DNA of 64,000 nt from Selaginella moellendorffii. Lineage: Eukaryota > Plantae > Lycopodiophyta. How positions within the stretch are numbered: the first letter of the stretch is position 1; each line of letters opens with the position of its first letter. The notes beneath the pieces are model-generated. The model was not told the origin of the DNA, did not search any database, and saw only the letters and a program-made list of their open reading frames with translations. Shown here piece by piece: positions 38,701 through 63,791 of the stretch. A program made the translations under genes and the position numbers. The stretch lies in the NCBI RefSeq assembly GCF_000143415.4, contig NW_003314324.1, positions 819,379-883,378 of the forward strand, written 5' to 3'.

Positions 38701-38972
38701 AGTTCCATTCCATGCTAGCTAGTGGAGTACCCATGTGTGAGACATAAAATCCCTAGGCCCCAAAGTGGAGCCGGAAAGGGTGCCACGTGGTAGTGGCCGA
38801 AGTGAAAACCAAACGAGCGTAACACGTTTGGACTAAAAGCTCCGACTTGGAAGGTCGAGAGCGGGAGTGGAACTCCCAACAAAGTGCTCGAGGAGTGAGC
38901 ATGAGGCAACCAATAAGAAAGGCTCCAAAAAAGGACCCAAAAAGGACCAACACATGACACGTGGAAGTGTCC

Positions 38973-42374: not shown

Positions 42375-43790
42375 CTACGATCCCAGAGTAGTATACTTGC
42401 GGAAGAATTCATGGTTCACGAGCTTCTTCATATGGATTGCAGGTAGCGAGATGAGCAGCCGCCGGTGCCTTCCCCCTCTCGGGCTGGGGAGAATCACCGT
42501 GACACCGTTCCCATACCACGGCGGCTGCATTACCAGAGAGTAGTGTACAGTCTTTCCCCATCCAAAATCAACGCTGTACACAGGGAAACTGTGCAAGCTC
42601 GTGCTGTAGATCCCAGTCCCCGACACAAAATCACCATTTAGATTGATCTTCCTTCCTCTGCCCAGCTCCATCTCCATCCAATCGATGGCGGATTGCATGT
42701 GTTCTTGAGTGGTGCTTAGGATATCCTCGTGGAAGAGCCTCGCAGCGTAGGAGAGATGGCGGGATTTGATGTCCCCGGCCTTGGCAGTGAGGCATGGCGA
42801 GTGGATGCTATTGCCAATGTACGAGGCTGGGACTGGGGGGTTCCAGCGGTTCTTGCCCTTGAGAGAGATCGCATAGACGTAGCTTGTGATGATCGAGTCT
42901 TGGAGATCTCTGGCCTCGGTGATGGCTTTCCAGATCATGGCGCTCGTTGCCTCGAACGAGGTTGGAGGGCGGCCATAGCTGTACGGACCACTGTGAACGT
43001 CTCGGATAAGATCGTCGACTTGGTCAGGATCCATCTCAAACATCTTCACGACGTACTCGCACGTTACGTCGGTTGCTTTGTCCGAGTGAGTGTTATAGAT
43101 CGGAGAGGAGTAGTAGTCGCGGACTGGCAGAATGATCGCTGGGGGCTGCCTGGCCTGGAAAATGTTAGAGGCAAAAACCGGAGGGCTCAAAAGCGGCAGG
43201 CCTCGGTGGATTTCGGACCAAGCATTCACAAACGCAAAGTTTGAGGATCCATCTAGCACCACTTCGGCCACTAAGATCCCCAATGCAATCCCACCACACT
43301 TGAACTTCGTCACCTAGATTCAGGAATTCCATGAATATTTAGGAATTAACTGCGATATCAAGAAACCTGCCTGAACTTTGAAGATCGGAGCAGTGTCTGG
43401 ATCCGTGATGGCCACTTCCGAAGGATTGAGATGCTGCTCGATGGAGCAAAACGCCATATTTTTCCAATCGCTGAAGCTGGCGTCGGGGGCACTCGCCTCC
43501 ACAAACGAGACACCAGCGTCGTTGCAATCCACCTCCAGCTTGTGACCATCTTCCGCCCTGCGCACCCGCCCTGCCAAGACATAAAACGGGACAAGCACTC
43601 TGGACAGCGAAGCTCTCAAGCTCTCGACAAGATCATCCCTGCTAGATGGTGGGAAATAGTAGACTTGCTTGGTATAATTCTCAAAGGAGATGTGGAAGTC
43701 GAGATTGGAGAGCTTGTGAATCCGGGGCTGTGGAGTTGGAGTTTCGGGCTTGACAGTCCAAGACCCCAACACCGTCACAACACTAGCCAT
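42375..43790 (-). CDS. BAHD acyltransferase-family protein, copy 1 (intact; EXXXD in place of HXXXD)
   Basis: LSNLD, LSRVLVPFYVLAGR, VDCNDAGV.FVEA, Q|VTKFKCGG, AEVVLDG, YIGN, DFGWG; intron 43314-43370. Confidence 0.92.
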
Positions 43791-44536
43791 GGTTGATCAT
43801 AGGAACACACACAAACGTAATATATATATATATATAGCAAAGTTTGTACAGTTATAAAATCTTAAAGGTAAGGGTATTTATATTTATTGTTTTATCTTGA
43901 ATTTAGTTTTACATTTTTATTAGTTATAACAATCATTTAAATAATGGGTTTAAAGTAAAAAATGATACGGGATAGAGCTAAAGAGCCAATCCAGCTTTTC
44001 CTACATGCATTCTTCCAGAACAAAGAAGAGCATTCCCTTTCGTAGTCCAAGGCCCACGCGAAAGAAACCAATGGCCTAATGAAGAGGTTAAGGGCAAGCC
44101 CGTACTGAACTAGTACAATCTGAAGGACTTTTTTGTCCCACGTATACAGGTTTCTTCAGAACTGTACAGACCACGTTAGCCACGTGGGTTTATCAATAAG
44201 ATTCTTACCAAGAACTAAACACAGTTGCCAATGGTGCGATCACGTGAAGACCAGGGAATATAAAGTTTAAACAATAGAAATTAGATGCGAACTCACAAAG
44301 CTATGAGAGCTGTAGCTCTGGAAAAGCATCAGATGGAAGAACTGAAAGCTGTTTCCCGTGTACCACAACCATCACCTCTAATAACTCCTCGCAGCATCGC
44401 ACTAGGGCAGATTACTTACAACTTGCAATATCGTACTCGTCCTCCCTGCCTGCAAGTGGGCAGCCAGTTGAGATTATTCTGCCCTTGTGAAAAGTGTGCA
44501 CATCCTTTCCTGTGACGTGGAGAGGATCAAATACAA

Positions 44537-44610
44537 TTCCGTTGCCGGGATTTGAACCAGGGTCGCCTGGATGAAAGCCAGGCATCCTGACCGGAATAGA
44601 CGACGACGGA
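44537..44610 (-). tRNA. tRNA-Glu(UUC)-like gene, probably degenerate
   Basis: TCCGTCGTCGTCTATTCCGGTCAGGATGCCTGGCTTTCATCCAGGCGACCCTGGTTCAAATCCCGGCAACGGAA: perfect anticodon stem CCTGG/CCAGG around TTC and a B-box GGTTCAAATCC. One mismatch each in the acceptor and T stems; no T4 terminator. Confidence 0.8.
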
Positions 44611-44656
44611 TTAGAGGCCTCAGCTAAAATAATAGTACTTGTATTATCAGATTGCT

Positions 44657-46154
44657 TCACCAGAAGACGTAAGATTGATCGAAGTGTCCCTTCCTACAAG
44701 CACAGTACAAAGAGGCTCTGAGCGATTTTAGATTTTGATGGGAGTAAGTACCCGTCTCGTCCGGAATAGATTGGCGAATAGTTGTAGATCAATAGCTGCT
44801 CTTCTTCTTCCCAAGAAGCTGTGTGGCTTGACTTCAGAGCCTCGCTACTCAGACAAACAGTCGACAGTTTATCCTGTCTAATGAGAAGGTGAAGAGAATT
44901 ACCTGACGAAGAAGCTCGCAGCGCTCTGTGTAATTCGAACGGCATCCGGAGAGTGAGGTATTCCTTCGTATCCCCATTCGAAAGCATTCTTCTGCAAAAT
45001 CGAGAGAATATCTAAACAAAGAGGTGAAAAACGAGAAAAGCTCTACCTCGGGATGCCATTGCACACTAGTTACTGGATACTTGCGTCCTTCAATCGTCGA
45101 AATATATATCTGAAAATCCAAAGGAACTGATGGCTCAAGAGATTTGGCACCGAAAATGTTACCTTTCCATTCAGGTCAGGAGTTGTAGTTAGCACGTCAA
45201 AGAAATCTCGAAGGCTCTGTGTGTCTCTCCAAGTCTGTGGAGATAGACCTTTCTGCAATCCAAGCCAAAGAAATGAGAAGTAGAAAACACAAAGTGCTGA
45301 GAACCTTACAACGTGATTCTGCATTGCAAGCTTCTCGTGCTCCACCTTATCCAGAATGTCCTTAGGAAACCTGGACAAAGAACACTTCACAAGCACATAC
45401 AAAGAACTGACTCGTTACCAGGTAAACATGCTGCGCCCTTTGGCCCAGTCGCCCACGAAGTTTAGCTCTCCAGCAGCTTTGTGTGCGTTGTAATCGTCCA
45501 GGATGGAATGGTTGCCACTGACGATCACGGCTAGAAGTTCCAGACCCAAGCACGTCCCAAACACGGGAAAATAATCTCCCTTATCATTTGCTTCCAGTGC
45601 CCTCTACAAGATCAAACTAAACAATCAAGACTCTAGTTGCAAAGTCACTAGCATGAATACTCCTGGAAAAAACAATGGACGAAGAACGAACAAGAAGCAT
45701 TCCAAAGCTAAAGCAAGAGGGAAGAACACAAACCTTGAAGAGGAACTCGCTGGCGCGGTAGTAGGGACCATCTTGCAAGCTTGCACTCCCACCAGCGAAC
45801 AAAATGCCATTGATCAGCGAGAATTTCTGAGCAAACAAATAAGGGCAAAGAAATTTAGCTCATGGAAGTTACCTTCGCTAGCGTCTCCCAAGGCTCGTTG
45901 TAAAGCAAAGGAACGGCGCGAGCGCCCCCGGCCTCGACGAATTTCACATACGAGGCAGCGATGTAAGATATGTTGGAGCGCCTGGGATCGCCGGGCTCCA
46001 GCCTGTTGATGTAGCTCCTGTCATCGCCATCGCCGGGCTGAGTGAGAATCCCTATCAGCGGCCGCTTCTCTCGGGATTCTTCGGGTAGCTGGATGATCCT
46101 AGCGGCGGCGATCGCAGCGAGCGCGAGGAAGATCGCTACAATGGCTCCTGCCAT
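44657..46154 (-). CDS. GGH: Gamma-glutamyl hydrolase (peptidase C26), intact, 9 exons
   Basis: Signal peptide; RPLIGILTQPGDG, SYIAASYVKFVEAGGARAVP, catalytic GTCLG and QWHPE|KNAFEW; last exon GKGHFDQSYVFW* ends at 44657. Confidence 0.92.
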
Positions 46155-46199
46155 GGCGACCCTAGCGTAAGAGCCCTAATTCGCGGGAAATTCTCGTCC

Positions 46200-46600
46200 G
46201 CGTCAATTGCTAGAGCAGCGGACACACACAAGAAACAAGCAAAGATCGAGCGCCGCCAAGAGCCAGAAGAAGTAGTTCATATGGTGATCGATCCGCCACC
46301 CTTGCTCGTGATCTTCTCCACCGCAAGAACAAGAACACTACTCCCTAAATCCTTGCGTGCGTTTCCAACCCCGCCACAACCATGGCCCTTTGCAAGCAGG
46401 TCAACTCGCTCTGTTGACCGATCAACATGCGAAGAACTTGGACGAGAAGCCTCTCGTCAAGCGGCACTGTGAGAATGACGGCGATGGTGTCACATGCCGC
46501 GAGCGATGCCGGGGGCACTTTGAAGCCGGAGATGCGGTTGCGCATTTCTTGCCCCTACTGCACGAACAGCGTCGAGGTCTGGATGAAAACGGTGGAGAAG
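46200..46600 (-). pseudogene. 3' fragment of an NPF/PTR transporter
   Basis: Homologous to 62110-62710 (RNRISGFKVPPASLAA..TIAVILTVPL.ERLLV) with internal deletions and no 5' part. Confidence 0.85.
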
Positions 46601-46619
46601 CATTCTGCTGCGAGCGGCG

Positions 46620-47880: not shown

Positions 47881-47904
47881 CTCAAACCCCATATGAACCA
47901 GTGA

Positions 47905-49318
47905 TCATTCCAGAGTAGTATACTTGCGGAAGAATTCATGGTTCACAAGCTTCTTCATATGGATTGCAGGCAGCGAGATGAGCAGCCGCCGGTGCCTTCC
48001 TCCTCTCGGGCTGGGGAGAATCACCGTGACACCGTTCCCATACCACGGCGGCTGCATTACCAGAGAGTAGTGTACAGTCTTTCCCCATCCAAAATCAACG
48101 CTGTACACAGGGAAACTGTGCAAGCTCGTGCTGTAGATCCCAGTCCCCGACACAAAATCACCATTTAGATTGATCTTCCTTCCTCTGCCCAGCTCCATCT
48201 CCATCCAATCGATGGCGGATTGCATGTGTTCTTGAGTGGTGCTTAGGATATCCTCGTGGAAGAGCCTCGCAGCGTAGGAGAGATGGCGGGATTTGATGTC
48301 CCCGGCCTTGGCAGTGAGGCATGGCGAGTGGATGCTGTTGCCAATGTACGAGGCTGGGACTGGGGGGTTCCAGCGGTTCTTGCCCTTGAGAGAGATCGCA
48401 TAGACGTAGCTTGTGATGATCGAGTCTTGGAGATCTCTGGCCTCGGTGATGGCTTTCCAGATCATGGCGCTCGTTGCCTCGAACGAGGTTGGAGGGCGGC
48501 CATAGCTGTACGGACCACTGTGAACGTCTCGGATAAGATCGTCGACTTGGTCAGGATCCATCTCAAAAATCTTCACTACGTACTCGCACGTTACGTCGGT
48601 TGCTTTGGCCGAGTGAGTGTTATAGATCGGAGAGGAGTAGTAGTCGCGGACTGGCAGAATGATCGCTGGGGGCTGTCTGGCCTGGAAAATGTTAGAGGCA
48701 AAAACCGGAGGCCTCGAAAGCGGCAGGCCTCGGTGGATTTCGGACCAAGCATTCACAAACGCAAAGAATGAGGATCCATCCAGCACCACTTCGGCAGTTA
48801 AGATCCCTAATGCGATCCCACCACACTTGAACTTCGTCACCTAGATTCAGGAATTCCATGAAATATTGAAGAATTAAATGCGATATCAAGAAACCTGCCT
48901 GAACTTTGAAGATCGGAGCGGTGTCTGGATCCGTGATGGCCACTTCCGAAGGATTGAGATGCTGCTCGATGGAGCAAAGCGCCATGTTTTTCCAATCGCT
49001 GAAGCTGGCATCGGGGGCACTCGCCTCCACAAACGAGACGCCAGCGTCGTTGCAATCCACCTCCAGCTTGTGACCATCTTCCGCCTTGCGCACTCGTCCT
49101 GCCAAGACATAAAACGGGACAAGCACTCTGGACAGCGAAGCTTTCAAGCTCGCGACAAGATCATCCCTGCTAGATGGCGGGAAATAGTAGACTTGCTTGG
49201 TGTAATTCTCAAAGGAGATGTGGAAGTCGAGATTGGAGAGCTTGTGAATCCGGGGTTGTGGAGTCGGAGTTTCTGGCTTGACAGTCCAAGACCCCAACAC
49301 GGTCACAACACTGGCCAT
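47905..49318 (-). CDS. BAHD acyltransferase-family protein, copy 2 (intact; TAEVVLDG)
   Basis: Near-identical to copy 1 with the same two-exon structure; DFGWG present. Confidence 0.92.
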
Positions 49319-49730
49319 TATTGACGAGAGAACATACGTACAACCTAAAATATATATAACACCAAATCTTTCGTGGGTTCCAGGAAATGCAAAGCCTTGA
49401 AAAAATGCGTGCGAACTATGCGTGGCGACGCACGTGGTCCATAGCCACGAACACAGATCACGACAAGGACAAAGTCAGCTTTTTGTGTACACTGTGTACA
49501 CGTTTTGCGCGTTCACTGTGCCTCCTCCGTGCGGGCCTAACCATGTAGAAGCAGCTGCGGTCTGCCCCTCTCTGCCGTGTCTAAGTCGACATCTCCCCTC
49601 TGGCCGGGCAAGGGTTCAATAGTATCGTATTTGATCATGAAATTTTTTCAGTGGAGAAACATGACGTCGACGGATGCATGATCTATTGTGGCGCAGTCGG
49701 GTAGTCTGGGTTAGACGACAACGGATTCTT

Positions 49731-51066
49731 CCCAAGTGGCTTGACTTCAGAGCCTCACTACTCAGAGTCGACTGTTTCCATGAAGATGAAGGGACTAACC
49801 TGACGAAGTGCTCTGTGTAATTCGAATGGCATCCGGAGAGTGGGGTATTCCTTCGTTTCAAATGCATTCTTCTGCAAAATCGAGAGAATATAAAAACAAA
49901 GAGATGAAAAGCGAGAAAAGCTTTTGTCATTGCACACCAGTTATTGGATAAAGCACATCAAACTGAGGTTCCATTCCATCCGGGAACTCATCGACAAAGG
50001 CAAAATTCTTCTGGAATTTTGTCCTACCAACACGCTGGCGGATGTCCTGACCAAGGCTCTACCTTGTGTAAAGCATCAAGTCTTCCTAAAGACACTCAAG
50101 CTAGGTAATGGAAACCTTGAGGAGTGTGGGAAGCACAAGGTCCACATCACTAGCCACATCACATATCCTCACTAACCGTCAAGAGTTGCCACATCCTCTT
50201 AAAATTCCTAAATGCAGCTGCTTCCTACATTTCCATGGATCATCACTATAAACCCATACAATTAACCATGTATTAACCGTCATAACAATAACACAACACT
50301 GTTTCATAATACAACAAGACCTTTCTGCAATCCAAGCCAAAGAAGAAAACACAAACTAAACCTTAGAATGTGATTCCGCAAGCTTCTCGTGCTCCACCTT
50401 ATCCGGAATGCCCTTAGGAAACCTGGACAAAGAACATTTCACAAACACATACAAAGAACCGACTCGTTACCAGAACATGCTGAGCTCTTTGGCCCAGTCG
50501 CCCACGAAGTTTAGCTCTCCAGCAGCTTCGTGGTATGCGTTGTAATCGTTCAGGATGGAATGGTTGCCACTGACGATCACAGCTAGAAGTTCCAGACCCA
50601 AGCACGTCCTATCATTTGCTTCCAGTGCCCTCTACAAGATCAAAATAAACAATCAAATACTCTAGTTCCAAAGTGAATACTCCTGGACGAAGAACGAACA
50701 AGAAGCATTCCAAAGCTAAAGCAAGAGGGAAGAACAAAGAGAAACTCGCTGGCGCGGTACTTAGGACCATCTTGCAAGCTTGCGCTCCCACCAGCAAACA
50801 AGATGCCACTGATCAGCGAGAATTTCTGTGCAAAAAAATAAGCGCAAAGAAACTGGAAGTTACCTTTGCTAGCGTCTCCCAAGGCGGAACGGCGCGAGCA
50901 CCCCGGCCTCTACGAATTTCACATACCAGGCAGCGATGTAAGATATGTTGGAGCGCCTAGGACCGCCCGTCGATGTAGCTCCTCCCATCGCCATTGTCAG
51001 GCTGAGTGAGAATCCCAATCAGCGGCGCTTCTCCCGGGATTCTTCGGGCAGCTGGATGATCCCGGC
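49731..51066 (-). pseudogene. GGH pseudogene, copy 2 (no start or signal peptide, deletions, interrupted by Copia)
   Basis: Collinear with 44810-46100 but frameshifted, missing the HPE codons and the last exon. Confidence 0.88.
49951..50316 (+). mobile_element. 5'-truncated Ty1/Copia end: RNase H C-terminus, short polypurine tract and a ~190-bp 3' LTR (50125-50316)
   Basis: KHIKLRFHSIRELIDKGKILLEFCPTNTLADVLTKAL matches Copia RNase H; GAGGAG is followed by TG...CA; GGH sequence resumes at 50317; the insertion is absent from paralogue copy 4. Confidence 0.85.
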
Positions 51067-51109
51067 AATTTCCCGCGAATTAGGGTTCTTATGCTATGGT
51101 TTTTTCATT

Positions 51110-52792
51110 TCGCCATAGCCCCGTGTCAATTGCTAGAGCAGCGGACGCACACAAGAAACAAGCCAAGATCAGTGGCGACGAGCGCTGCCAAGAGCCAGAA
51201 GAAGTAGTCCATATGGTGATCGATCCAGCTCCCGCGTCTGCCACCCTTGCTCGTGATCTTCTCCACCGCACCAACAAGAACAACTCCCTAAAGCATTTGT
51301 AGCAAGCGACAGTGCACCGATCAAACTCCGCATTGCCTCGGGGGACTCCTTGTTGAAGAACTCGGTCCTCCCAGCAAACGCGAACACTCCAGCGGCGCCC
51401 ACTTGAAAATGCTGTGGCACCTGCCAGAGTATACTCACCTGGTGAACCATTGCGTGCGTTTCCACCACCCCCGCCACAACCATGGCCAAAAGCCCCAGGC
51501 CCATCCTTTGCAAGCCGGTCAACCCACTCTGTTGACCGGTCAACATGTGAAGAACTGGGACGAGAAGCCTCTCGTAGAGCGGCACTGTGAGAATGACGGC
51601 GATGGTGTCAAATGCCGCGAGCGATGCCAGGGGGACTTTGAAGCCGGATATGCGGTTGCGCATTTCTTGCCCCTGCTGCACGAACAGCGTCGAGGTCTGG
51701 ATGAAAACGGTGGAGAAGATGATGCTCGTCCCCCACACTGGCATCAAGTGCAGGATGATCTTCACCTCCTCGATCTGCGTTACCGTGCATAACCTCCATC
51801 CCGTCGGTGGTGAGTTCCCAAACGCTGTTTGCTCATCGCGAGCGATGGCTGCCGCCTTGTCGAGAAATCCAAATCCAGCAGTGTGCTGAATCTGCTGACT
51901 TCCTGGAATGCTGGAACTCTCCCCTTGTAGCTCATAGAGGGTTGCATTTGCATGCTCGACTTCTATCCTTGCACTTCTGTTTCTGGCAGCGGCAACGAAA
52001 ACTTGTGCCACCCTGGTTAGCGGGCTCCCACCCGGTTGCTTGTGCTTGTACCGCGGCCAGCCCATGAGAAAGATCATGGCGGACGCCGTGACCGCCACTG
52101 TGGGGATGGCGAACCCGAGCGGCCAGCTTACTTCCTGCTGGACATATACCAGAGCTGTTCCCGCAATCAGACCTCCGATGTTGGTGAAGTAGCTCCAGTT
52201 GAAGAAGCTGGCCTTGTTGCTTGCTGGATCATCAGACTCTTCCAGTTGAAAAGCACCGAATGATGAAATGCAAGACCTTGGTCCACCGGATCCCACGGCT
52301 ATGACGTATAACGCTGTGTAAAGCAAGGCCGGGTTTACTGTTTTGCTGCAAGTATGTGATCCAGTGCTATGGCATGTAGGGTGTAGCAAAGTTGACAAGG
52401 TTAGCAAGATCATACCCTGTGAGTGTAACGTTGGGCAAAGGTGAGTCTAGAGTGTCTCTTTTTCTTACCAGCAAGTAGATGCCGAAAAAGGCGTTGATCG
52501 TCCGAAACTGGCCGAGGTAAGAGTCTGCAAGGAATCCACCCAGTAGAGGGCTAAGATTACAGGTTCCCATCCAGTTTGAGACTGCGTTTGCCGCACTGGC
52601 TTTGGATACGTGAAGCTTGCTAGACATGTAGATCACCATGTTTGCTACAATGGCGTAGTATGCGAGCCGTTCCATGGAGAGAGAAACTAGAAACGCAGAG
52701 AAATTAAGAAAGCCATTCAATCCTTATGGGAACCGAAGTGTACCAATAATGAATTTGCAAGCCCACCATCCAGCAGCTCCATTGTCGGCCAT
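51110..52792 (-). pseudogene. NPF/PTR (POT) transporter copy with a C-terminal frameshift, probable pseudogene
   Basis: Three exons as in the 62081-63791 copy, but an 11-bp deletion at ~51281 shifts the frame in the last transmembrane region; also in-frame deletions and PQYFL changed to PQHFQ. Confidence 0.8.
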
Positions 52793-53761: not shown

Positions 53762-55143
53762 CTACGATCCCAGAGTAGTATAGTTGCGGAAGAATTCATG
53801 GTTCACGAGCTTCTTCATATGGATTGCAGGTAGCGAGATGAGCAGCCGCCGGTGCCTTCCTCCTCTCGGGCTGGGGAGAATCACCGTGACACCGTTCCCA
53901 TACCACGACTGCATTACCAGAGAGTAGTGTACAGTCTTTCCCCATCCAAAATCAACGCTGTACACAGGGAAACTGTGCAAGCTCGTGCTGTAGATCCCAG
54001 TCACCGACACAAAATCACCATTTAGATTGATCTTCCGTCCTCTGCCCAGCTCCATCTCCATCCAATCGATGGCGGATTGCATGTGTTCTTGAATGGTGCT
54101 TAGGATATCCTCCTGGAACAACCTCGCAGCATAGGAGAGATGGCGGGATTTGGCCTTGGCAGTGAGGCATGGCGAGTGGATGCTGTTGCCAATGTACGAG
54201 GCTGGGACTGGGGGGTTCCAGCGGTTCTTGCCCTTGAGAGAGATCGCATAGACGTAGCTTGTGATGATCGAGTCTTGGAGATCTCTGGCCTCGGTGATGG
54301 CTTTCCACATCATGGCGCTCGTTGCCTCGAACGAGGTTGGAGGGCGGCCATAGCTGTACGGACCACTGTGAACGTCTCGGATAAGATCGTCGACTTGGTC
54401 AGGATCCATCTCAAACATCTTCACTACGTACTCGCACGTTACGTCGGTTGCTTTGGCCGAGTGAGTGTTATAGATCGGAGAGGAGTAGTAGTCGCGGACT
54501 GGCAGAATGGGGGCTGCCTGGCCTGGAAAATGTTAGAGGCAAAAACCGGAGGCCTCGAAAGCGGCAGGCCTCGGTGGATTTCGGACCAAGAATTCACAAA
54601 CGCAAAGAATGAGGATCCATCCAGCACCACTTCGGCCGTTAAGATCCCTAATGCGATCCCACCACACTTGAACTTCGTCACCTAGATTCAGGAATTCCAT
54701 GAAATATTGAAGAATTAAATGCGATATCAAGAAACCTGCCTGAACTTTGAAGATCGGAGCAGTGTCTGGATCCGTGATGGCCACTTCCGAAGGATTGAGA
54801 TGCTGCTCGATGGAGCAAAACGCCATGTTTTTCCAATCGCTGAAGCTGGCATCGGGGGCCTCCACAAACGAGATGCCACCGTCGTTGCAATCCACCTCCA
54901 GCTTGTGACCATCTTCCGCCCTGCGCACCCGCCCTGCCAAGACATAAAACGGGACAAGCACTCTGGACAGCGAAGCTCTCAAGCTCGCGACAAGATCATC
55001 CCTGCTAGATGGCGGGAAATAGTAGACTTGCTTGGTGTAATTCTCAAAGGAGATGTGGAAGTCGAGATTGGAGAGCTTGTGAATCCAGGGCTGTGGAGTC
55101 AGAGTTTCGGGCTTGACAGTCCAAGACCCAACACCCTAGCCAT
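53762..55143 (-). pseudogene. BAHD copy 3, frameshifted pseudogene
   Basis: 7-bp deletion at ~54508 in exon 2 plus several small in-frame deletions relative to copies 1, 2 and 4. Confidence 0.88.
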
Positions 55144-55892
55144 ATAGGAACATACACAAACTTAATATATATATTACCTATAAGATTTCATGTTTGTTTA
55201 TATATATATAACGAGTAAAGGTATTTATATTTATGGTTGCATTTTCATTAGTTATATTAATCATTTAAAATAGGGGTTTAAAGTAAAAAATGATACGGGA
55301 TTATACTGACAGAGCTAAAGAGCCAATCCAGCTTTTCCTACATGCATTCTTCCAAAACAAAGAAGAGCATTCTCTTTCGTAGTCCAAGGCCCACGCGAAA
55401 GAAACAAATGGCCTAATGAAGAGGTTAAGGGCAAGCCCGTACTGAACTAGTACAATCTGGAGGACTCTTTTGTCCGATGTAAGTAGTATACAGGTTTCTT
55501 CAGAACTGTACAGACCACGTTAGCCACGTGGGTTTATCAATAAGATTGTTACCAAGAACTAAACTCGATCGGACAGTTGCCAATGGTGCGATGACCAGCG
55601 AATATAGAGTTTAAACAATAGAAATTAGATGCGAACTCACAAAGCTATGGGTTCCACAGCGAGAGCTGTAGCTCTGGAAAAGCATCAGATGGAAGAACTG
55701 AAAGCTGTTTCCCGTGTACCACAACCATCACCTCTAATAACTCCTCTCAGCATCGTACCAGGGCAGATTACTTACAACTTGCAATATCGTTCTCGTCCTC
55801 CCTGCCTGCAAGTGGGCAGCCAGTTGAGATTATTCTGCCCTTGTGAAAAGTGTGCACATCCTTTCCTGTGACGTGGGGAGGATCAAATACAA

Positions 55893-55966
55893 TTCCGTTG
55901 GCGGCATTTGAACCAGGGTCGCCTGGATGAAAGCCAGGCATCCTGACCGGAATAGACGACGACGGA
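55893..55966 (-). pseudogene. Second, more decayed tRNA-Glu(UUC)-like copy
   Basis: Same as 44537-44610, but the 3' strand of the T stem has changed from CCCGG to GCCGC. Confidence 0.78.
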
Positions 55967-56012
55967 TTAGAGACCTCAGCTAAAATAACAGTAGTTTTAT
56001 TATCAGATTGCT

Positions 56013-56884
56013 TCACCAGAAGACGTAAGATTGATCGAAGTGTCCCTTCCTACAAGCACAGTACAAAGAGGCTCTGAGCGATTTTAGATTTTGATGGGAG
56101 TAAGTACCCGTCTCGGCCGGAATAGATTGGCGAATAGTTGTAGATCAATAGCTGCTCTTCTTCTTCCCAAGAAGCTGTGTGGCTTGACTTCAGAGCCTCG
56201 CTACTCAGACAAACAGTCCAGAGTTTATCCTGTTTAATGAGAAGGTGAAGAGAATTGCCCGACGAAGAAGCTGGCAGCGCTCTGTGTAATATGAACGGCA
56301 TCCGGAGAGTGAGCTATTCCTTCATATCCCCATTCGAAAGCATTCTTCTGTAAAATCGAGAGAATATCAAAACAAAGAGGTGAAAAACGAGAAAAGCTCT
56401 ACCTCGGGATGCCATTGCACACCAGTTACTGGATACTTGGGTCCTTCAATCGTCGAAATATATATCTGAAAATCCAAAGGAACTGATGGCTCAAGAGATT
56501 TGGCACCGAGAATTACCTTCCCATTCAGGTCAGGAGTCGTAGTTAGCACGTCGAAGAAATCTCTAAGGCTCTGTGTGTCTCTCCAAGTCTGTGGAGATAG
56601 ACCTTTCTGCAATCCAAGCCAAAGAAATGAGAAGAAGAAAACACAAAGTAAGTGCTGAGAACCTTACAATGTGATTCTGCATTGCAAGCTTATCGTGCTC
56701 CACCTTATCCAGAATGTCCTTAGGAAACCTGGACAAAGAACATTTCACAAGCACATACAAAGAACTGACTTGTTACCAGGTAAACATGCTGCACTCTTTG
56801 GCCCAGTCGCCCACGAAGTTTAGCTCTCCAGCAGCTTTGTGTGCGTTGTAATACTCGAGGATGGAATGGTTGCCACTGACGATC
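56013..56884 (-). pseudogene. GGH copy 3, 5'-truncated (lacks the first exons and the catalytic Cys)
   Basis: 3' exons are near-identical to copy 1; similarity breaks at ~56884, next to a 15-bp tandem duplication (CTAGTGGGATTAAAA x2). Confidence 0.88.
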
Positions 56885-56959
56885 CTAGTGGGATTAAAAC
56901 TAGTGGGATTAAAAATTATTAGTTAAGAATAATAATAGAAATAAAACTTACCTAGTTCA

Positions 56960-57800
56960 ACATATGTATATAATATATCAGTTAAAGTTTGTGTAGTACG
57001 ATTGGCTACCGGAACCATAAACATTCGATCTGAATCACGTTCAATTCCTCCAAAGACTCATTAACCTTCTACTCTTCTACCACAATTATATTTCTGCTTA
57101 CCAAACTTACTTTCATCAATTTCCACAATACTTCCTGGACCACCAATCTTTTGATTACCTCATTGTAATGTGATAATGCAAATATCACGACAAAAGTTGT
57201 ACCAATTTGTTATCGTGTGCTCACTTTTAATACTACACTCAATATGAGTTTAATCTTGTGGCATTTTAATGCACCAACAATACATCACTCTAAGCATTTG
57301 AGTAAATATGAGATTACTATTTGCAAACCATGTATTAGTTCTAAGAAATTTTGTGATATTGCAATTTTTACAATTCCACTTTAAACCATCTTTACAACCT
57401 TGATTATCATATCGATATCTCATTGGTCAATGACATCTTTCACATTCTCTCTCTTGTGGGAGAAGACCAACCGTAATACAAAAACTAAAAGAATTTACCT
57501 TACTATTAGTTCTCTCAATAATATTAGAAAAAGAAAGAATACTATCTTAAGCATGATTTACATATTCCAATCTAGCCATAATACTAAAGAGAATGAATAA
57601 AATAAGAAAGAAAATATAAGGAGCACAAACATAAAACACAATGAGGAAAGACCTAAACCAATCGTAGGTTATATACTTATAAATTATAGCCGTTCATTCA
57701 CTGGCTAATTATAAAATTATATAATTAAAATTTAACGTTACTAATTTAGAGTTAGTCGTTAAACATTTAGGGTGTAGAGCTGGGAATGACTAAGCGCGCC
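56960..57800 (-). mobile_element. Merlin / IS1595 (ISXO2-like) DNA transposon remnant
   Basis: Hand translation of ~57410-56975 gives DGLKWNCKNC..LRTNTWF..YCW..HTITNWYNFCRDIC..KIGGPGSIVEIDESKFGKQKYNCGRRVEG**VFGGIERDS..FMVPVANRT..TL, with in-frame stops. AT-rich; absent from the paralogous half. Confidence 0.85.
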
Positions 57801-58928
57801 ACGGAGGAAGCGAGGAGGCAACCACGTAAGAGTGAGGGGTGCTGTATTGTGCATTTCTTCCGCAGCACTGCTAAGATCGCACTGGCGGCGGCATTGTGCT
57901 GCAAGCAGCAGTGCTAGATCGCAGCAGCAGTGGCCGCGATCGCAGCTCGAGGAGATCTAGCCGGTAAGAGACTGATATTGCTGCCTGTGACTCGATGCAG
58001 TGAGATTTTCTTCAAACCAGAACGGAATGAAGCCTAGGGTGTCTGCTGTCCCATGGAAGACACCCGAGATCCTCTTCTCACAACACTCAAACTTGCCAAC
58101 AAACTGATACACGACTCTAACTGCCTGAGGTAGAACTTAGGATAATCCAAAGGTTCTGGGAAAGGTGTTTATAGGCCAAATAGCAATGTACGTGACATAT
58201 CAAGTAAGACCGGCTTCTCAAGCCAGCTCTTGAATGTTAAGAATGAAACAATCAAAGCATAGCTTTTTATAAATGTTCTTGGCTGTGTATGGTTCCAGAG
58301 AGTAGAGGTCAGACAGTCCAAGAGCCATAATTCTTTCTGGAAAGGGCATGATTGCTTTGGCTCGTCAACATGGCGCGAGAGAAACCCTGGTGATTCTCCA
58401 ACGATATCCTTGTGATTAGAGCGCTGTATGTCACTACATATAAGAATGCCCACTTGAGGCTGGCCAAAACGCTGGGAAAGAAGAAATGTTCCTTGCGCGT
58501 AATCTTGTCTCACAATCGAATAGATGCCACCATTCGATGGATATGAACTGCAGCCACGTGTCAATTTGCAATTTGCCATTTCGTTTTCTCCCATAGCACC
58601 AATGAGCTTCTTCCCTTCCAGCCAGTGTGCCCGCCATCAAACATCAAACATCAACGTCATTTTAACCCCAACCATAGTTAGATGATGATGACACCAAATT
58701 CTTCCATATAAATATTTGTTGTCTTTTATAGAGATTTGCTATACATTTGGTCCAGATGCAATGAACCAAAGCTGGTGGGCAATGTCCTCGTGGACGGTGA
58801 ATCAGAAATATAGACTTTTACATTTTTAAGGATTTAATCCTTGTGTTTAAAATAAGATTACTTATCAAAACAAATCCTTAGTTCAAGAAAAAAATTACCA
58901 ACACCCCATAGATATGAATAGATCATTC

Positions 58929-60345
58929 TTACGATCCGAGAGTAGTATACTTGCGGAAGAATTCATGGTTCACGAGCTTCTTCATATGGATTGCAGGTAG
59001 CGAGATGAGCAGCCGCCGGTGCCTTCCTCCTCTCGGGCTGGGGAGAATCACCGTGACACCGTTCCCATACCACGGCGGCTGCATTACCAGAGAGTAGTGT
59101 ACAGTCTTTCCCCATCCAAAATCAACGCTGTACACAGGGAAACTGTGCAAGCTCGTGCTGTAGATCCCAGTCCCCGACACAAAATCACCATTTAGATTGA
59201 TCTTCCTTCCTCTGCCCAGCTCCATCTCCATCCAATCGATGGCGGATTGCATGTGTTCTTGAGTGGTGCTTAGGATATCCTCGTGGAAGAGCCTCGCAGC
59301 GTAGGAGAGATGGCGGGATTTGATGTCCCCGGCCTTGGCAGTGAGGCATGGCGAGTGGATGCTGTTGCCAATGTACGAGGCTGGGACTGGGGGGTTCCAG
59401 CGGTTCTTGCCCTTGAGAGAGATTGCATAGACGTAGCTTGTGATGATCGAGTCTTGGAGATCTCTGGCCTCGGTGGTGGCTTTCCAGATCATGGCGCTCG
59501 TTGCCTCGAACGAGGTTGGAGGGCGGCCATAGCTGTACGGACCACTGTGAACGTCTCGGATAAGATCGTCGACTTGGTCAGGATCCATCTCAAACATCTT
59601 CACGACGTACTCGCACGTTACGTCGGTTGCTTTGGCCGAGTGAGTGTTATAGATCGGAGAGGAGTAGTAGTCGCGGACTGGCAGAATGATCGCTGGGGGC
59701 TGTCTGGCCTGGAAAATGTTAGAGGCAAAAACCGGAGGCCTCGAAAGCGGCAGGCCTCGGTGGATTTCGGACCAAGAATTCACAAACGCAAAGAATGACG
59801 ATCCATCCAGGATCACTTCGGCCGTTAAGATCCCCAATGCGATCCCACCACACTTGAACTTCGTCACCTAGATTCAGGAATTCCATGAAATATTGAAGAA
59901 TTAACTGCGATATCAAGAAACCTGCCTGAACTTTGAAGATCGGAGCAGTGTCTGGATCCGTGATGGCCACATCCGAAGGATTGAGATGCTGCTCGATGGA
60001 GCAAAACGCCATGTTTTTCCAATCGCTGAAGCTGGCGTCGGGGGCACTCGCCTCCACAAACGAGACGCCAGCGTCGTTGCAATCCACCTCCAGCTTGTGA
60101 CCATCTTCCGCCTTGCGCACTCGTCCTGCCAAGACATAAAACGGGACAAGCACTCTGGACAGCGAAGCTTTCAAGCTCGCGACAAGATCATCCCTGCTAG
60201 ATGGCGGGAAATAGTAGACTTGCTTGGTGTAATTCTCAAAGGAGATGTGGAAGTCGAGATTGGAGAGCTTGTGAATCCGGGGTTGTGGAGTCGGAGTTTC
60301 GGGCTTGACAGTCCAAGACCCCAACACGGTCACAACACTGGCCAT
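58929..60345 (-). CDS. BAHD acyltransferase-family protein, copy 4 (intact; TAEVILDG)
   Basis: Near-identical to copies 1 and 2; both exons are open; DFGWG present. Confidence 0.92.
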
Positions 60346-60974
60346 TGTTGATGAGAGAAACGTACATACAACCTAATATATATCTATATATATAATTTGT
60401 GGAAATGCAAAGCTTTGCGTGCCAGCTGTGCGCGGCGACGCGTTTGGTTGTGGTCCATAGCCACCAGGGCTCCACACAGATCACGACAAGGATTAATTCG
60501 GCCTTTTTGAAAAGTTGTTTACACGTTTTTCGCGTTCACTCTGAGGCTCCAAGATCAAACTGGAGTTGGTAAGGCTGAAAATTTTATCAACTCCACTCTG
60601 TCGCTATTTTCACATCGCCACCATGCAATTGCCAACAATCTGGTCAATGAAATGTGTATGTACATTCCTTTAGAGGCTAATACAAAAACTAAACATGTTA
60701 CTTTCTCATGAAATTAGCTAACGAAATTCTTCCACGTGCGGGCCTAGCCCTGTTGTATAAGTAGCTGGTCTCCTCCGTGCGGGCCTAACTCTGTAGTAAA
60801 CGCAGCTGCGGTCTCCTCCTCCGTGCCGTGTCTCCCCTCTGCGTCCGGCAACGGTATCATATTTGACCATGAAATTTCTTTTTTTCACGGCCAGTGGAGA
60901 AACATGAAGTCGACGGGTGCATGGTCTATTGTGGCGCAGTCGGGTCGTCTGGGTTAGACGACAACGGATTCTTC

Positions 60975-62042
60975 CCAAGTGGCTTGACTTCAGAGCCTCG
61001 CTACTCAGACAAACAGTCGACTGTTTCCATGAAGATGAAGGGACTAACCTGACGAAGAAGCTGGGTGCTCTGTGTAATTCGAATGGCATCCAGAGAGTGG
61101 TATTCCGTCGTATTCCCATTCGAATGCATTCTTCTGCAAAATCGAGAGACTATAAAAACAAAGAGATGAAAAGCGAGAAAAGCTTTTGCCATTGCACACC
61201 AGTTATTGGTTACTTGCGTCCTTCAATGGCCGAAATATATATCTGAAATTCCAAAGAAACTGATGGCTCAAGAGATTTGGGAGAAGTACCTTCCCATGAG
61301 TCGTAGTTAGCACGTCGAAGAAATCTCTAAGGCTCTATCTGTCCAAGTCTGTGGAGATAGACCTTTCTGCAATCCAAGTCAAAGAAGAAAACACAAACTA
61401 AACCTTACAATGTGATTCTGCAAGCTTCTCGTGCTCCACCTTATCCAGAATGCCCTTAGGAAACCTCTTTCACAAACACATACAAAGAACTGACTCGTTA
61501 CCAGAACATGCTGCGCTCTTTGGCCCTGTCGCCCACGAAGTTTAGCTCTCCAGCAGCTTCCAGTGCGTTGTAATAGTCCGAGGATGGAATGGTTGCCCCT
61601 GACGATCACAGAAGTTCCAGACCCAAGCACGTCCCAAGCATATCATTTGCTTTCAGTGCCCTCTACAAGATCAAAATAAACAATCAAAGACTAAAAACAA
61701 TGGACGAAACGAAGAACGAACAAGAAGCATTCCAACACTAAAGCAAGAGGGAAGAACATAGAGAAACTCGCCGGTACTTAGGACCATCTTGCAAGCTTGC
61801 GCTCCCACCAGCGAACAAGATGCCACTGATCAGCGAGAATTTCTGTGCAAACAAATAAGCGCAAAGAAACTGGTAAAGCAAAAGAACGGCGCGAGCACCC
61901 CGGCCTCTACGAGTTTCACATACGAGGCAGCGATGTAAGATATGTTGGAGCGCCTAGGACCGCCGTCGATGTAGCTCCTCTCATCGCCATCGTCGGACTG
62001 AGTGAGAACGCCGCTTCTCCCGGGATTTTGGATGATCCCGGC
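60975..62042 (-). pseudogene. GGH pseudogene, copy 4
   Basis: Shares lesions with copy 2 (lost start, lost HPE codons, lost last exon) but lacks the Copia insertion. Confidence 0.88.
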
Positions 62043-62080
62043 AATTTCCCGCGAATTAGGGTTCTTATGCTATGGTTTAT

Positions 62081-63791
62081 TCATTTCGCCATAGCCCGGA
62101 ATCTGTAGCAGCGGACACACACAAGAAACAAGCCAAGATCAGTGGCGACGAGCGCCGCCAAGAGCCAGAAGAAGTAGTCCATATGGTGATCGATCCAGCT
62201 CCCGCGTCCGCCACCCTTGCTCGTGATCTTCTCCACCGCAGCAACAAGAACACTACTGAGATAACTCCCTAAAGCATTTGTAGCGAGCGACAGCGCACCG
62301 ATCAAACTCCGCATTGCCTCGGGGGACTCCTCGTTGAAGAACTCGGTCCTCCCGGCAAACGCAAACACTCCAGCGGTGCCCACTAGAAAATACTGTGGCA
62401 CCTGCCAGAGTATACTCACCTGGTGAACCATTGCGTGCGTTTCCACCACCCCCGCCACAACCATGGCCACCATCGCCAGTAAAAGCCCCAGGCCCATCCT
62501 TTGCAAGCCGGTCAACCCACTCTGTTGACCGGCCAACCTGCGAAGAACTGGGACGAGAAGCCTCTCGTAGAGCGGCACTGTGAGAATGACGGCGATGGTG
62601 TCAAATGCTGCGAGCGATGCCGGGGGGACTTTGAAGCCGGATATGCGGTTGCGCATTTCTTGCCCCTGCTGCACGAACAGCGTCGAGGTCTGAATGAAAA
62701 CGGTGGAGAAGATGATGCTCGTCGCCCACACTGGCATCAAGCGCAGGATGATCTTCACCTCCTCGATCTGCGTTACCGTGCATAACCTCCATCCCGTCGG
62801 TGGTGAGTTCCCAAACGCTGTTTGCTCATCGCGAGCGATGGCTGCCGCCTTGTCGAGAAATCCAAATCCAGCAGTGTGCTGAATCTGCTGACTTCCTGGA
62901 ATGCTGGAACTCTCCCCTTGTAGCTCATAGAGGGTTGCATTTGCATGCTCGACTTCTATCCTTGCACTTCTGTTTCTGGCAGCGGCAACGAAAACTTGTG
63001 CCACCCTGGTTAGCGGGCTCCCACCCGGTTGCTTGTGCTTGTACCGCGGCCAGCCCATGAGAAAGATCATGGCGGACGCCGTGACCGCCACTGTGGGGAT
63101 GGCGAACCCGAGCGGCCAGCTTACTTCCTGCTGGACATATACCAGAGCTGTTCCCGCAATCAGACCTCCGATGTTGGTGAAGAAGTAGCTCCAGTTGAAG
63201 AAGCTGGCCTTGTTGCTTGCTGGATCATCAGACTCTTCCAGTTGAAAAGCACCGAATGATGAAATGCAAGACCTTGGTCCACCGGATCCCACGGCTATGA
63301 CGTATAACGCTGTGTAAAGCAAGGCCGGGTTTACTGTTTTGCTGCAAGTATGTGATCCAGTGCTATGGCATGTAGGGTGTAGCAAAGTTGACAAGGTTAG
63401 CAAGATCATACCCTGTGAGTGTAAGGTTGGGCAAAGGTGAGTCTAGAGTGTCTGTGTTTCTTACCGGCAAGTAGATACCGAAAAAGGCGTTGATCGTCCG
63501 AAACTGGCCGAGGTAAGAGTCTGCAAGGAATCCACCCAGTAGAGGGGTAAGATTACAGGTTCCCATCCAGTTTGAGACTGCGTTTGCCGCACTGGCTCTG
63601 GATACGTGAAGCTTGCTAGACATGTAAATCACCATGTTTGCTACAATGCCGTAGTATGCGAGCCGTTCCATGGAGAGAGAAACTAGAAACGCAGAGAAAT
63701 TAAGAAAGCCATTCAATCCTTATGGGAAACGAAGCGTACCAAGGATGAATTTGCAAGCCCACCATCCAGCAGCTCCATGGTGGATGATCAT
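62081..63791 (-). CDS. NPF/PTR (POT) transporter, NPF8/PTR-like, intact, 3 exons
   Basis: GWWACKFILVSLSMERLAYYG, W.GT...PLLGGFLADSYLG, SFFNW, PGGSPLTRVAQV, WRLCTVTQIEEVK, LQRMGLG, PQYFLVG, EFF..ESP.AMRS, DYFFWLLA; GT-AG introns in frame. Confidence 0.9.

What the first reader, a model, noticed from the sequence alone, without database searches (positions are those of the whole stretch)
42375..63791. Candidate metabolic gene cluster: amplified NPF transporter - gamma-glutamyl hydrolase - atypical BAHD module
Seen: three unrelated gene families lie co-oriented on the minus strand in the order NPF, GGH, (tRNA-Glu), BAHD, and the unit was duplicated twice. Known: BAHDs and NPFs are recurrent parts of plant specialised metabolism (e.g. 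NPF-family GTR glucosinolate transporters). Class I glutamine-amidotransferase-fold gamma-glutamyl peptidases (GGP1) were recruited to remove gamma-Glu in glucosinolate synthesis, and GGH has the same fold. Inference: this could be a lycophyte pathway in which a gamma-glutamylated intermediate is hydrolysed, modified by the BAHD and transported. Both the BAHD and the NPF have altered key motifs, which fits functional divergence. The GGH may instead be the ordinary folate-polyglutamate enzyme carried along as a passenger.
Basis: partly seen in the sequence, partly recalled or inferred. Interest (0 to 1): 0.85.

Follow-up and report, generated by a model that had tools for sequence, protein, structure and literature searches.

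The report
Duplicated transporter–hydrolase–acyltransferase array, mostly decayed
This spikemoss region is one three-gene block (a transporter, a folate-tail hydrolase and an unusual acyltransferase) copied twice and then partly decayed; the neat repeated gene order comes from the copying, and nothing found here shows that the three genes work in one pathway.

Summary
Window 42375-63791 (Selaginella moellendorffii scaffold GL377628.1) holds four co-oriented units in the order NPF8-like transporter, gamma-glutamyl hydrolase (GGH), tRNA-Glu-like, BAHD. They arose by two rounds of segmental duplication.

- **Intact genes:** one NPF (62081-63791), one GGH (44657-46154) and three BAHDs (B1, B2, B4). 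The other six copies are pseudogenes.
- **Other haplotype:** it lacks about 11.9 kb of the array and holds one NPF, one GGH and three BAHD genes, all annotated at full length.
- **GGH:** orthodox. It differs at 4 of 91 near-invariant columns, the allelic dN/dS is 0.11, and it is the only S. moellendorffii GGH among the hits listed.
- **BAHDs:** they carry E-x-x-x-D in place of HxxxD, yet are under purifying selection (dN/dS 0.12-0.26). Spliced RNA contigs were present in 4 of 4 runs.
- **NPF:** very divergent. It differs at 63 of 231 near-invariant columns (LSMER for ExxER, TM4 Lys to Arg, TM10 Glu to Gly). Its allelic dN/dS is 0.52, and it was barely detected in RNA contigs.
- **Linkage elsewhere:** none at a moss GGH locus or a clubmoss NPF locus.

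The most likely reading is a tandem array formed by descent, with GGH as a housekeeping passenger. A shared pathway is neither shown nor excluded. The scan separately noted the BAHD His-to-Glu change on this same window (s1-421649).

The parts
62081..63791 (-). N3: intact NPF8-like (POT/PTR) transporter gene, 533 aa. Exons 63791-63740, 63682-63465 and 63412-62081; introns of 57 and 52 nt.
   Evidence: PF00854. tblastn against lycophyte NPF8 proteins and the sequence read. The model has the same structure as the other haplotype's 533-aa protein P0411. It differs at 63 of 231 near-invariant NPF8 columns.
60979..62012 (-). G3psi: GGH pseudogene. No start of exon 1, frameshifts in exons 1, 3, 5 and 7, in-frame stops in exons 3 and 6, exon 8 cut after 22 nt, exon 9 absent.
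   Evidence: Exon-by-exon blastn and translation, tblastn. No RNA contig in any of 4 runs.
58929..60345 (-). B4: intact BAHD gene, 452 aa. E-V-I-L-D in place of HxxxD, DFGWG kept. One 58-nt GC-AG intron at 59867-59924.
   Evidence: Translates exactly to P0407. Spliced contigs with the joint 59866/59925 in 4 of 4 runs, one of them 1508 nt with no mismatch.
56013..56884 (-). G2psi: 5'-truncated GGH copy. It runs from exon 3 nt 78 to exon 9 and lacks exons 1-2 and the nucleophile Cys. The remaining exons have no stop.
   Evidence: GenBank calls only a 57-aa product here.
55893..55966 (-). Second tRNA-Glu(UUC)-like copy, more degraded.
   Evidence: ARAGORN, Rfam 31.8 bits against a gathering score of 29, alignment.
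53762..55134 (-). B3psi: BAHD pseudogene. 10-nt and 7-nt frameshifting deletions plus in-frame deletions of 6, 9 and 3 nt.
   Evidence: DNA alignment of the four copies. The longest ORF is 220 aa. The annotated 482-aa model P0002 carries the same deletions and an unrelated N-terminus.
51147..52777 (-). N2psi: NPF copy with 1-aa and 4-aa deletions and a frameshift near 51283 that replaces the last transmembrane part.
   Evidence: tblastn frame change. Alignment of the annotated models P0410 and P0412.
49736..51062 (-). G4psi: GGH pseudogene. No start, 13 nt of deletions and a stop in exon 1, part of exon 3 missing, exons 5, 6 and 9 absent. It shares lesions with G3psi.
47905..49318 (-). B2: intact BAHD gene, 451 aa, E-V-V-L-D.
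   Evidence: Translates exactly to P0403. Alignment.
46230..46599 (-). N1psi: NPF remnant. Two fragments with an in-frame stop.
   Evidence: tblastn.
44657..46154 (-). G1: the only intact GGH gene. Nine exons, 330 aa, hydrophobic N-terminus like a signal peptide, Cys in G-T-C-L-G, His in Q-W-H-P-E.
   Evidence: Splice model. Translates exactly to P0285, which UniRef names folate gamma-glutamyl hydrolase. PF07722 on the allelic 330-aa product. It differs at 4 of 91 near-invariant columns.
44537..44610 (-). tRNA-Glu(UUC)-like gene 47 nt downstream of the GGH stop codon, on the same strand. One non-standard pair each in the acceptor and T stems.
   Evidence: Also present after the GGH of the other haplotype.
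42375..43790 (-). B1: intact BAHD gene, 452 aa, E-V-V-L-D. Its intron is 57 nt.
   Evidence: Translates exactly to P0408. Alignment.

Best explanation
This is a young, structurally polymorphic tandem array, not a demonstrated metabolic gene cluster.

**History (shown).** One ancestral block on the minus strand read: NPF8-like transporter, GGH, tRNA-Glu-like gene, HCT-like BAHD.
1. The block was duplicated once. One copy then lost its GGH and the other lost its NPF.
2. The resulting double unit of about 11 kb was duplicated again. One NPF, one GGH and one BAHD then decayed.
3. Each haplotype now holds one intact or full-length NPF, one GGH and three BAHD genes.
4. The four-fold order and co-orientation follow from this history and add no independent evidence of co-function.

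**Function (inferred).**
- The GGH is the species' ordinary secretory/vacuolar folylpolyglutamate hydrolase and was carried along as a passenger.
- The BAHD copies are the part kept in several copies. They are strongly expressed, homogenised within the gene body and under purifying selection. They encode a working protein, even though Glu replaces the catalytic His.
- The NPF is a fast-evolving, weakly expressed NPF8 offshoot with a remodelled proton-coupling motif and peptide pocket. It is either acquiring a new substrate or drifting towards loss.
For: **Duplication history**
- Repeat pairs are 91-94% identical, about 11 kb apart.
- GGH-derived DNA differs by 17-20% between the two unit types but only 6-9% within a type.
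- G3psi and G4psi share lesions, so they were already broken before the second duplication.
- The other haplotype (GL377603.1) joins N3 directly to the B2 unit. It lacks window 62031-50169 and is annotated with NPF 533 aa, BAHD 451, GGH 330 and BAHD 452, plus an inverted BAHD.
- Single-copy flanks of the two haplotypes are 97.1% identical.

**GGH is ordinary**
- It is identical to P0285.
- It is 58-63% identical to moss, fern and other GGHs.
- It differs at 4 of 91 near-invariant columns, against 5 of 92 for a moss control.
- Allelic dN/dS is 0.11.
- P0285 and its allele form the only S. moellendorffii cluster among the 120 best of 653 GGH hits.

**BAHD**
- dN/dS is 0.12-0.26 among six copies, and about 0.10 against the 63%-identical paralogue P0003, which also has Glu at the His position.
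- Spliced contigs were found in 4 of 4 runs.

**NPF**
- It differs at 63 of 231 near-invariant columns, against 12 of 235 for the canonical SmNPF8.2.
- Allelic dN/dS is 0.52.
- Only three short contig pieces were listed, in one run, and none in the other three.

**Linkage**
- No BAHD or NPF lies within 10 kb of the Physcomitrium GGH. No GGH or BAHD lies within 10 kb of a Diphasiastrum NPF8 relative.
Against: - The three families remain adjacent, with one working copy of each, in both haplotypes. A functional module would also look like this.
- The NPF's changes sit in coupling and substrate-pocket residues, which could reflect a new substrate rather than decay.
- The expression test used assembled contigs only. 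These show presence, not level or absence.
- The allelic dN/dS for the NPF rests on few substitutions (14 amino-acid differences).
- The synteny test covered only 10-kb flanks at two loci in distant species with larger genomes. No other Selaginella genome could be queried.
- A second GGH scoring below the 120 listed hits cannot be excluded.
Confidence: 0.7

Rival explanations
1. True three-part metabolic cluster. A gamma-glutamylated specialised intermediate is deglutamylated by the GGH, acylated or otherwise handled by the His-less BAHD, and moved by the remodelled NPF.
For: - The three non-homologous families are adjacent, and one working copy of each is kept in both haplotypes.
- The BAHD and the NPF are lineage-specific and altered in key residues.
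- GGH shares the class-I glutamine-amidotransferase / peptidase C26 fold with GGP1 (Pfam PF07722 and PF00117 on the product).
Against: - The GGH shows no sign of functional divergence and is the only one listed for the species.
- The NPF is barely detected where BAHD contigs are abundant, and its constraint is relaxed.
- There is no scaffold-forming enzyme in the array.
- The extra NPF and GGH copies were lost after both duplications, while most BAHD copies were kept.
- No linkage was seen elsewhere.
Confidence: 0.08
2. Two-gene specialised pair. The amplified BAHD and the divergent NPF work together (product made, then transported), and the GGH is a passenger.
For: - Both genes are fast-evolving and restricted to S. 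moellendorffii among the hits obtained. The nearest relatives outside the species are 29% or less identical for the BAHD and 49% for the NPF.
- The NPF changes cluster in the pocket and coupling residues.
- From general knowledge, NPF members have been recruited as transporters of specialised metabolites.
Against: - NPF transcripts are nearly absent from the four runs that hold BAHD transcripts.
- The NPF's allelic dN/dS of 0.52 is several times that of the BAHDs.
- The second NPF copy was allowed to decay.
Confidence: 0.1
3. Folate-salvage pair. The NPF8-like carrier moves dipeptide-like folate breakdown products or gamma-glutamyl peptides (for example p-aminobenzoyl-glutamate or gamma-Glu-Glu) across the tonoplast for or from the vacuolar GGH. 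The BAHD is an unrelated neighbour.
For: - NPF8/PTR proteins are di- and tripeptide carriers, as the named hits show.
- Plant GGHs carry secretory signals and are described as vacuolar (PMC6451014).
- A second S. moellendorffii NPF8 gene (P0089) lies 6-10 kb from three tandem genes of the 5-formyl-THF cyclo-ligase family. This is a post-hoc coincidence with n=2.
Against: - This reading is speculative. The peptide N-terminus-binding Glu and the first Glu of ExxER are lost in N3.
- N3 shows low expression and relaxed constraint.
- No such linkage was seen at the moss GGH locus.
Confidence: 0.05

Closest known systems
Plant biosynthetic (metabolic) gene clusters
   Same: Three or more non-homologous genes lie side by side, including a BAHD-type tailoring enzyme family and a transporter family. 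Tandem duplication occurs inside the cluster, and the content is lineage-specific.
   Different: There is no scaffold-forming or signature enzyme, no shown co-expression (the NPF is nearly absent where the BAHD is abundant), and no product. One member is an orthodox primary-metabolism enzyme. The repeated order is due to duplication.
Folate gamma-glutamyl hydrolase (GGH, peptidase C26), often multi-copy in plants
   Same: G1 is a full-length GGH with the Cys and His motifs and a signal-like N-terminus. It is 48-63% identical to other plant GGHs and conserved at 87 of 91 near-invariant columns. [quoted passage not shown]
   Different: Here three of the four local copies are pseudogenes, so the working copy number is one per haplotype.
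GGP1-type gamma-glutamyl peptidases of glucosinolate and camalexin synthesis
   Same: They share the class-I glutamine-amidotransferase / C26 fold and the chemistry of removing a gamma-glutamyl group. The role of GGP1 is from general knowledge and PMC9804317 (listed).
   Different: G1 groups with bona fide GGHs by sequence along its full length. Nothing here suggests recruitment to a glutathione-conjugate pathway.
HCT-like (clade V) BAHD acyltransferases, and BAHDs that lack the catalytic His (Taxus BAPT, His to Gly)
   Same: PF02458 fold. The best solved relatives are HCTs (5KJS, 183.7 bits). DFGWG and the conserved intron after the Gln codon are kept. BAPT shows that a BAHD without the His can still be active, through a substrate-assisted, Mg2+-dependent route (PMC11600153).
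   Different: Glu replaces His, which I did not find described in the papers searched. In the AtHCT alignment an Arg of W-V-R-L-P aligns to Ser. From memory this is the shikimate-binding Arg, so the RefSeq name 'shikimate O-hydroxycinnamoyltransferase' is doubtful. Large BAHD surveys may discard such sequences: one removed all that lacked HxxxD (10.1101/2023.03.15.532435).
NPF8 / PTR di- and tripeptide transporters
   Same: PF00854. The best hits are NPF8.1, 8.2 and 8.3 proteins at 44-49% identity over the large exon.
   Different: Short N-terminus. LSMER for ExxER, TM4 Lys to Arg, A-F-Q-L-E for A-D-Q-F-D, TM10 Glu to Gly, and loop deletions. It differs at 27% of near-invariant columns, against 5% in the canonical Selaginella NPF8.2.

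Membership tests
Plant metabolic gene cluster | Three or more non-homologous genes physically adjacent | tested here: met
   The NPF, GGH and BAHD families lie within 21.4 kb in both haplotypes.
Plant metabolic gene cluster | Members are co-expressed | tested here: inconclusive
   BAHD contigs were present in 4 of 4 runs. The NPF gave only three short listed contig pieces, in 1 of 4 runs. Contigs cannot measure level.
Plant metabolic gene cluster | Members catalyse steps of one pathway; a scaffold-forming enzyme is present | tested here: not met
   No scaffold-forming enzyme family was found in 42-64 kb or in the flanks (PAP2_C and PPR genes). A shared pathway is not testable with these tools.
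Plant metabolic gene cluster | The linkage recurs in related species | tested here: inconclusive
   Linkage was absent within 10 kb at a Physcomitrium GGH locus and a Diphasiastrum NPF locus. No other Selaginella genome was available.
Gamma-glutamyl hydrolase (peptidase C26) | PF07722 domain over the full length | tested here: met
   PF07722 and PF00117 are recorded on the 330-aa product. G1 aligns end to end with plant GGHs.
Gamma-glutamyl hydrolase (peptidase C26) | Nucleophile Cys and catalytic His motifs | tested here: met
   G-T-C-L-G-L-E and Q-W-H-P-E align with the family motifs.
Gamma-glutamyl hydrolase (peptidase C26) | Activity on folylpolyglutamates | not testable with these tools
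   This needs an enzyme assay.
BAHD acyltransferase | PF02458 fold | tested here: met
   E = 1e-26 to 5e-46 on the two exons of each copy. HCT structures are the best PDB relatives.
BAHD acyltransferase | HxxxD with a catalytic His | tested here: not met
   Glu aligns with the first His of H-H-A-A-D of AtHCT. The same holds in all four window copies and in P0001 and P0003.
BAHD acyltransferase | DFGWG motif | tested here: met
   V-D-F-G-W-G-K is present in all copies.
NPF / POT proton-coupled transporter | PF00854 (PTR2) domain | tested here: met
   E = 2e-95 on the large exon.
NPF / POT proton-coupled transporter | ExxER/K motif on TM1 | tested here: not met
   The spliced model reads L-S-M-E-R, so the first Glu is Leu. 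The other haplotype's protein P0411 has the same.
NPF / POT proton-coupled transporter | Conserved TM4 Lys and TM10 Glu of the peptide site | tested here: not met
   Lys to Arg at residue 137 and Glu to Gly at residue 438, both in columns at least 95% conserved across 111 homologues. Assigning these residues to TM4 and TM10 rests on general knowledge of POT structures.

The most novel reading that the evidence does not exclude
The NPF8-like carrier, the GGH and the His-less (ExxxD) BAHD form a lineage-specific functional module. It would act on gamma-glutamyl or dipeptide-like conjugates: either a specialised metabolite, or folate and p-aminobenzoyl-glutamate salvage across the tonoplast. The BAHD would use Glu as its catalytic base or act non-catalytically.
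Probability: 0.08. Interest if true: 0.7.

Novelty: new member of a known kind. Interest (0 to 1): 0.25.

Why it matters
- **For genome mining.** This is a worked example of how segmental duplication can imitate a metabolic gene cluster. A motif of gene families repeated four times is a single adjacency that was copied, and each round of copying was followed by loss of the redundant transporter and hydrolase.
- **What deserves follow-up.** The acyltransferase itself is the real oddity. It is an expressed, multi-copy BAHD lineage under purifying selection, with Glu in place of the catalytic His. The scan holds this as a separate note (s1-421649).
- **If the pathway idea were right after all.** It would be an early-diverging plant cluster that recruits a folate-type hydrolase. 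That would be unusual.

Tried and rejected
- **Automatic beam-search gene model for the GGH.** It kept an intron and skipped exon 6. It was replaced by junction-by-junction modelling, which reproduced the annotated protein exactly.
- **Pfam on single GGH exons.** The exons are too short, so it gave almost nothing. GGH reference proteins were obtained through the search of protein representatives instead.
- **GGH copy number from the folate-evolution paper.** The figure is an image, and its supplement text carries no identifiers.
- **Scan notes for another GGH in this genome.** None was found, which proves nothing.
- **Gene-cluster or BAHD statements in the Selaginella expression atlas preprint.** None of the five terms searched occurs in it.
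- **Locus look-ups that were not on record.** These were the Sphagnum GGH, the BAHD paralogue P0004 and the Marchantia NPF.
- **The tRNA-Glu beside a gamma-Glu hydrolase as a functional hint.** Rejected: it is a slightly degraded tRNA-like gene copied along with the unit.
- **Share of words in the run search as evidence of GGH expression.** Rejected as too indirect, because run X1 also holds low-depth contigs outside the genes.

Full report
**Identity of the region.** The window is Selaginella moellendorffii. The 442-aa NPF exon is 100% identical to SELMODRAFT_234606 on scaffold GL377628.1 (1,151,164 bp). The gene models built here translate exactly to annotated proteins of that scaffold: BAHDs P0408, P0403 and P0407, and GGH P0285. 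The rest of the window carries unrelated genes: invertase, topoisomerase I, PPR proteins and AP2. Beyond the window's high end lie a PAP2_C gene and two PPR genes.

**Anatomy.** Self-alignment shows a two-level repeat. Reading the minus strand from high to low coordinates there are four units.
- **Unit A:** N3, an intact 3-exon, 533-aa NPF (63791-62081). Then G3psi (62012-60979). Then B4, an intact BAHD (60345-58929).
- **Unit B:** G2psi (56884-56013), the tRNA-Glu-like gene (55966-55893), then B3psi (55134-53762).
- **Unit C:** N2psi (52777-51147), G4psi (51062-49736), then B2, intact (49318-47905).
- **Unit D:** N1psi (46599-46230). Then G1, the intact 9-exon, 330-aa GGH (46154-44657). Then the tRNA-Glu-like gene (44610-44537). 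Then B1, intact (43790-42375).

**Lesions in the broken copies.**
- B3psi has 10-nt and 7-nt frameshifting deletions.
- N2psi has two in-frame deletions and a frameshift near 51283.
- N1psi is two fragments with a stop.
- G2psi lacks exons 1-2 and the Cys-bearing part of exon 3.
- G3psi and G4psi lack a start and carry stops, frameshifts and missing exons. They share several lesions.

**History.**
- Units A and C are 92-94% identical, and units B and D are 91% identical. GGH-derived DNA is only 80-83% identical between the A/C type and the B/D type.
- So an ancestral NPF-GGH-(tRNA)-BAHD block duplicated first. The A/C-type unit lost its GGH, and the D unit, of the B/D type, keeps only NPF remnants. 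The double unit of about 11 kb then duplicated again, and one NPF, one GGH and one BAHD decayed.
- The BAHD genes are about 96% identical whatever their unit type, and the high identity stops about 40 bp outside the gene. Synonymous divergence between BAHDs of different unit types is 0.06-0.08. This is far less than the neighbouring pseudogene DNA suggests, and it points to gene conversion.
- The second scaffold, GL377603.1, is the other haplotype. Its single-copy flank is 97.1% identical. It joins the N3 allele (98.6% identical) directly to the B2-type unit, skipping window 62031-50169. It is annotated with NPF 533 aa, BAHD 451, GGH 330 and BAHD 452, plus an inverted BAHD.
- Both haplotypes therefore hold one NPF, one GGH and three BAHD genes that are intact or annotated at full length. 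The repeated order and co-orientation are a consequence of copying, so the independent observation is a single three-gene adjacency.

**The GGH.**
- G1 aligns end to end with plant GGHs. It has a hydrophobic, signal-like N-terminus, the nucleophile Cys motif and the Q-W-H-P-E His motif.
- It is 58-63% identical to moss, fern and related sequences, and 47-50% identical to the seed-plant hits listed.
- At columns at least 95% conserved in 114 homologues it differs at 4 of 91 positions. A moss GGH control differs at 5 of 92.
- Allelic dN/dS is 0.11.
- In a profile search, P0285 and its allele P0398 form the only S. moellendorffii cluster among the best 120 of 653 hits. A weaker second copy below the listing cannot be excluded.
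- PMC6451014 states that all plant GGHs it analysed, with S. moellendorffii among the sampled species, have predicted secretory signals. It describes GGHs as vacuolar regulators of folate tail length.
- Nothing marks this GGH as recruited to another role.

**The BAHD.**
- All four window copies, the other haplotype's copies and the 63%-identical paralogue P0003 have Glu where HCT has the catalytic His. P0003 lies beyond the PAP2_C and PPR genes on the other haplotype. The window copies read E-V-V/I-L-D against H-H-A-A-D in AtHCT. DFGWG is kept.
- A more distant paralogue, P0004, keeps the His.
- The single intron sits after the conserved Gln codon. In the window copies it is GC-AG. RNA contigs from four runs show the 58-nt joint at 59866/59925, and the stated 3-nt ambiguity allows the GC-AG cut. 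One 1508-nt contig matches B4 without a mismatch.
- dN/dS is 0.12-0.26 among six copies and about 0.10 against P0003. The Glu-bearing protein is therefore maintained by selection.
- The closest solved structures are HCTs. However, an Arg in W-V-R-L-P of AtHCT aligns to Ser. From memory this is the shikimate-binding Arg, so the RefSeq name is probably wrong.
- Taxus BAPT (His to Gly) shows that a BAHD can work without the His (PMC11600153).
- One large BAHD survey removed sequences lacking HxxxD, which may explain why this group is little discussed. PMC11449225 lists a six-gene Selaginella-specific BAHD orthogroup. Whether it is this group was not checked.

**The NPF.**
- N3 belongs with NPF8/PTR di- and tripeptide carriers (44-49% identity).
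- Its first exon starts just before TM1. After a 57-nt intron the motif reads L-S-M-E-R instead of E-x-x-E-R.
- At near-invariant columns it differs at 63 of 231 positions, against 12 of 235 for the canonical SmNPF8.2. The changes include Lys to Arg at residue 137, A-F-Q-L-E for A-D-Q-F-D, and Glu to Gly at residue 438.
- Allelic dN/dS is 0.52, based on 14 amino-acid differences.
- In the four runs, N3 is covered only by three short listed contig pieces in run X1 and by nothing in the other three. G3psi is uncovered in all four.
- Contigs show presence rather than absence, so this is weak evidence. It does not suggest co-expression with the BAHD.

**Linkage elsewhere.**
- The Physcomitrium GGH locus (22 kb) holds no BAHD or NPF.
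- A Diphasiastrum NPF8 relative (24 kb) has no GGH or BAHD beside it.
- No paper found in the searches made here describes this array as a cluster.

**Verdict.** The pathway interpretation is not supported by the tests that could be run. I put about 0.7 on a tandem array formed by descent with no shared pathway. About 0.1 goes to a BAHD-NPF pair, 0.08 to the full three-part module and 0.05 to an NPF-GGH folate-salvage pair.

Noticed in passing
window 44537-44657; L004 15395-15515: The tRNA-Glu(UUC)-like gene lies 47 nt after the GGH stop codon on the same strand in both haplotypes. It may therefore sit in the GGH 3'UTR. A preprint reports dicistronic tRNA-mRNA transcripts in S. moellendorffii (10.1101/2020.04.13.039131). 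Whether this is one of them was not tested.
   Followed up: partly
L008 1-12140 (GL377584.1): The canonical SmNPF8.2 gene (P0089) has three tandem genes of the 5-formyl-THF cyclo-ligase family (PF01812) 6-10 kb upstream, with an SSF symporter gene in between. So two different NPF8-type genes in this species each sit near a folate-family enzyme gene. This is post hoc (n=2) and may be coincidence.
   Followed up: no
window 42337-43836, 47907-49358, 53767-55134, 58885-60392: The BAHD genes are about 96% identical across unit types, while adjacent GGH-derived DNA is only 80-83% identical. The identity drops within about 40 bp of the gene ends. This suggests gene conversion confined to the BAHD gene body.
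   Followed up: partly
window 50169-62031 compared with L004 10089-10099: There is an 11.9-kb structural difference between the two haplotypes: a whole double unit is present here and absent from GL377603.1. That haplotype also has an extra inverted BAHD copy (P0001) between the array and the PPR gene.
   Followed up: partly
window 59867-59924; L003 10442-10485: The BAHD intron is GC-AG in all four window copies and is confirmed by RNA contigs. In the 63% paralogue P0003 the intron at the same site is a 44-nt GT-AG.
   Followed up: yes
window 53762-55941; 62081-63671; 51169-52675: Several public gene models here look wrong. P0002 (482 aa) stitches the broken B3psi to an unrelated N-terminus. 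P0010 (512 aa) starts at M-E-R-L and misses exon 1 of N3. P0410 and P0412 model the frameshifted N2psi as a protein.
   Followed up: partly
L003 10001-11439 (GL377603.1): A 63%-identical BAHD paralogue (P0003), also with Glu for the catalytic His, lies beyond the PAP2_C gene and two PPR genes on the other haplotype. The His-less lineage therefore predates the array.
   Followed up: partly
window 32000-38000 and 38969-39309: An AT-rich stretch (GC 0.34-0.39) and a short tandem repeat lie between the PPR gene and the array. Their nature was not examined.
   Followed up: no
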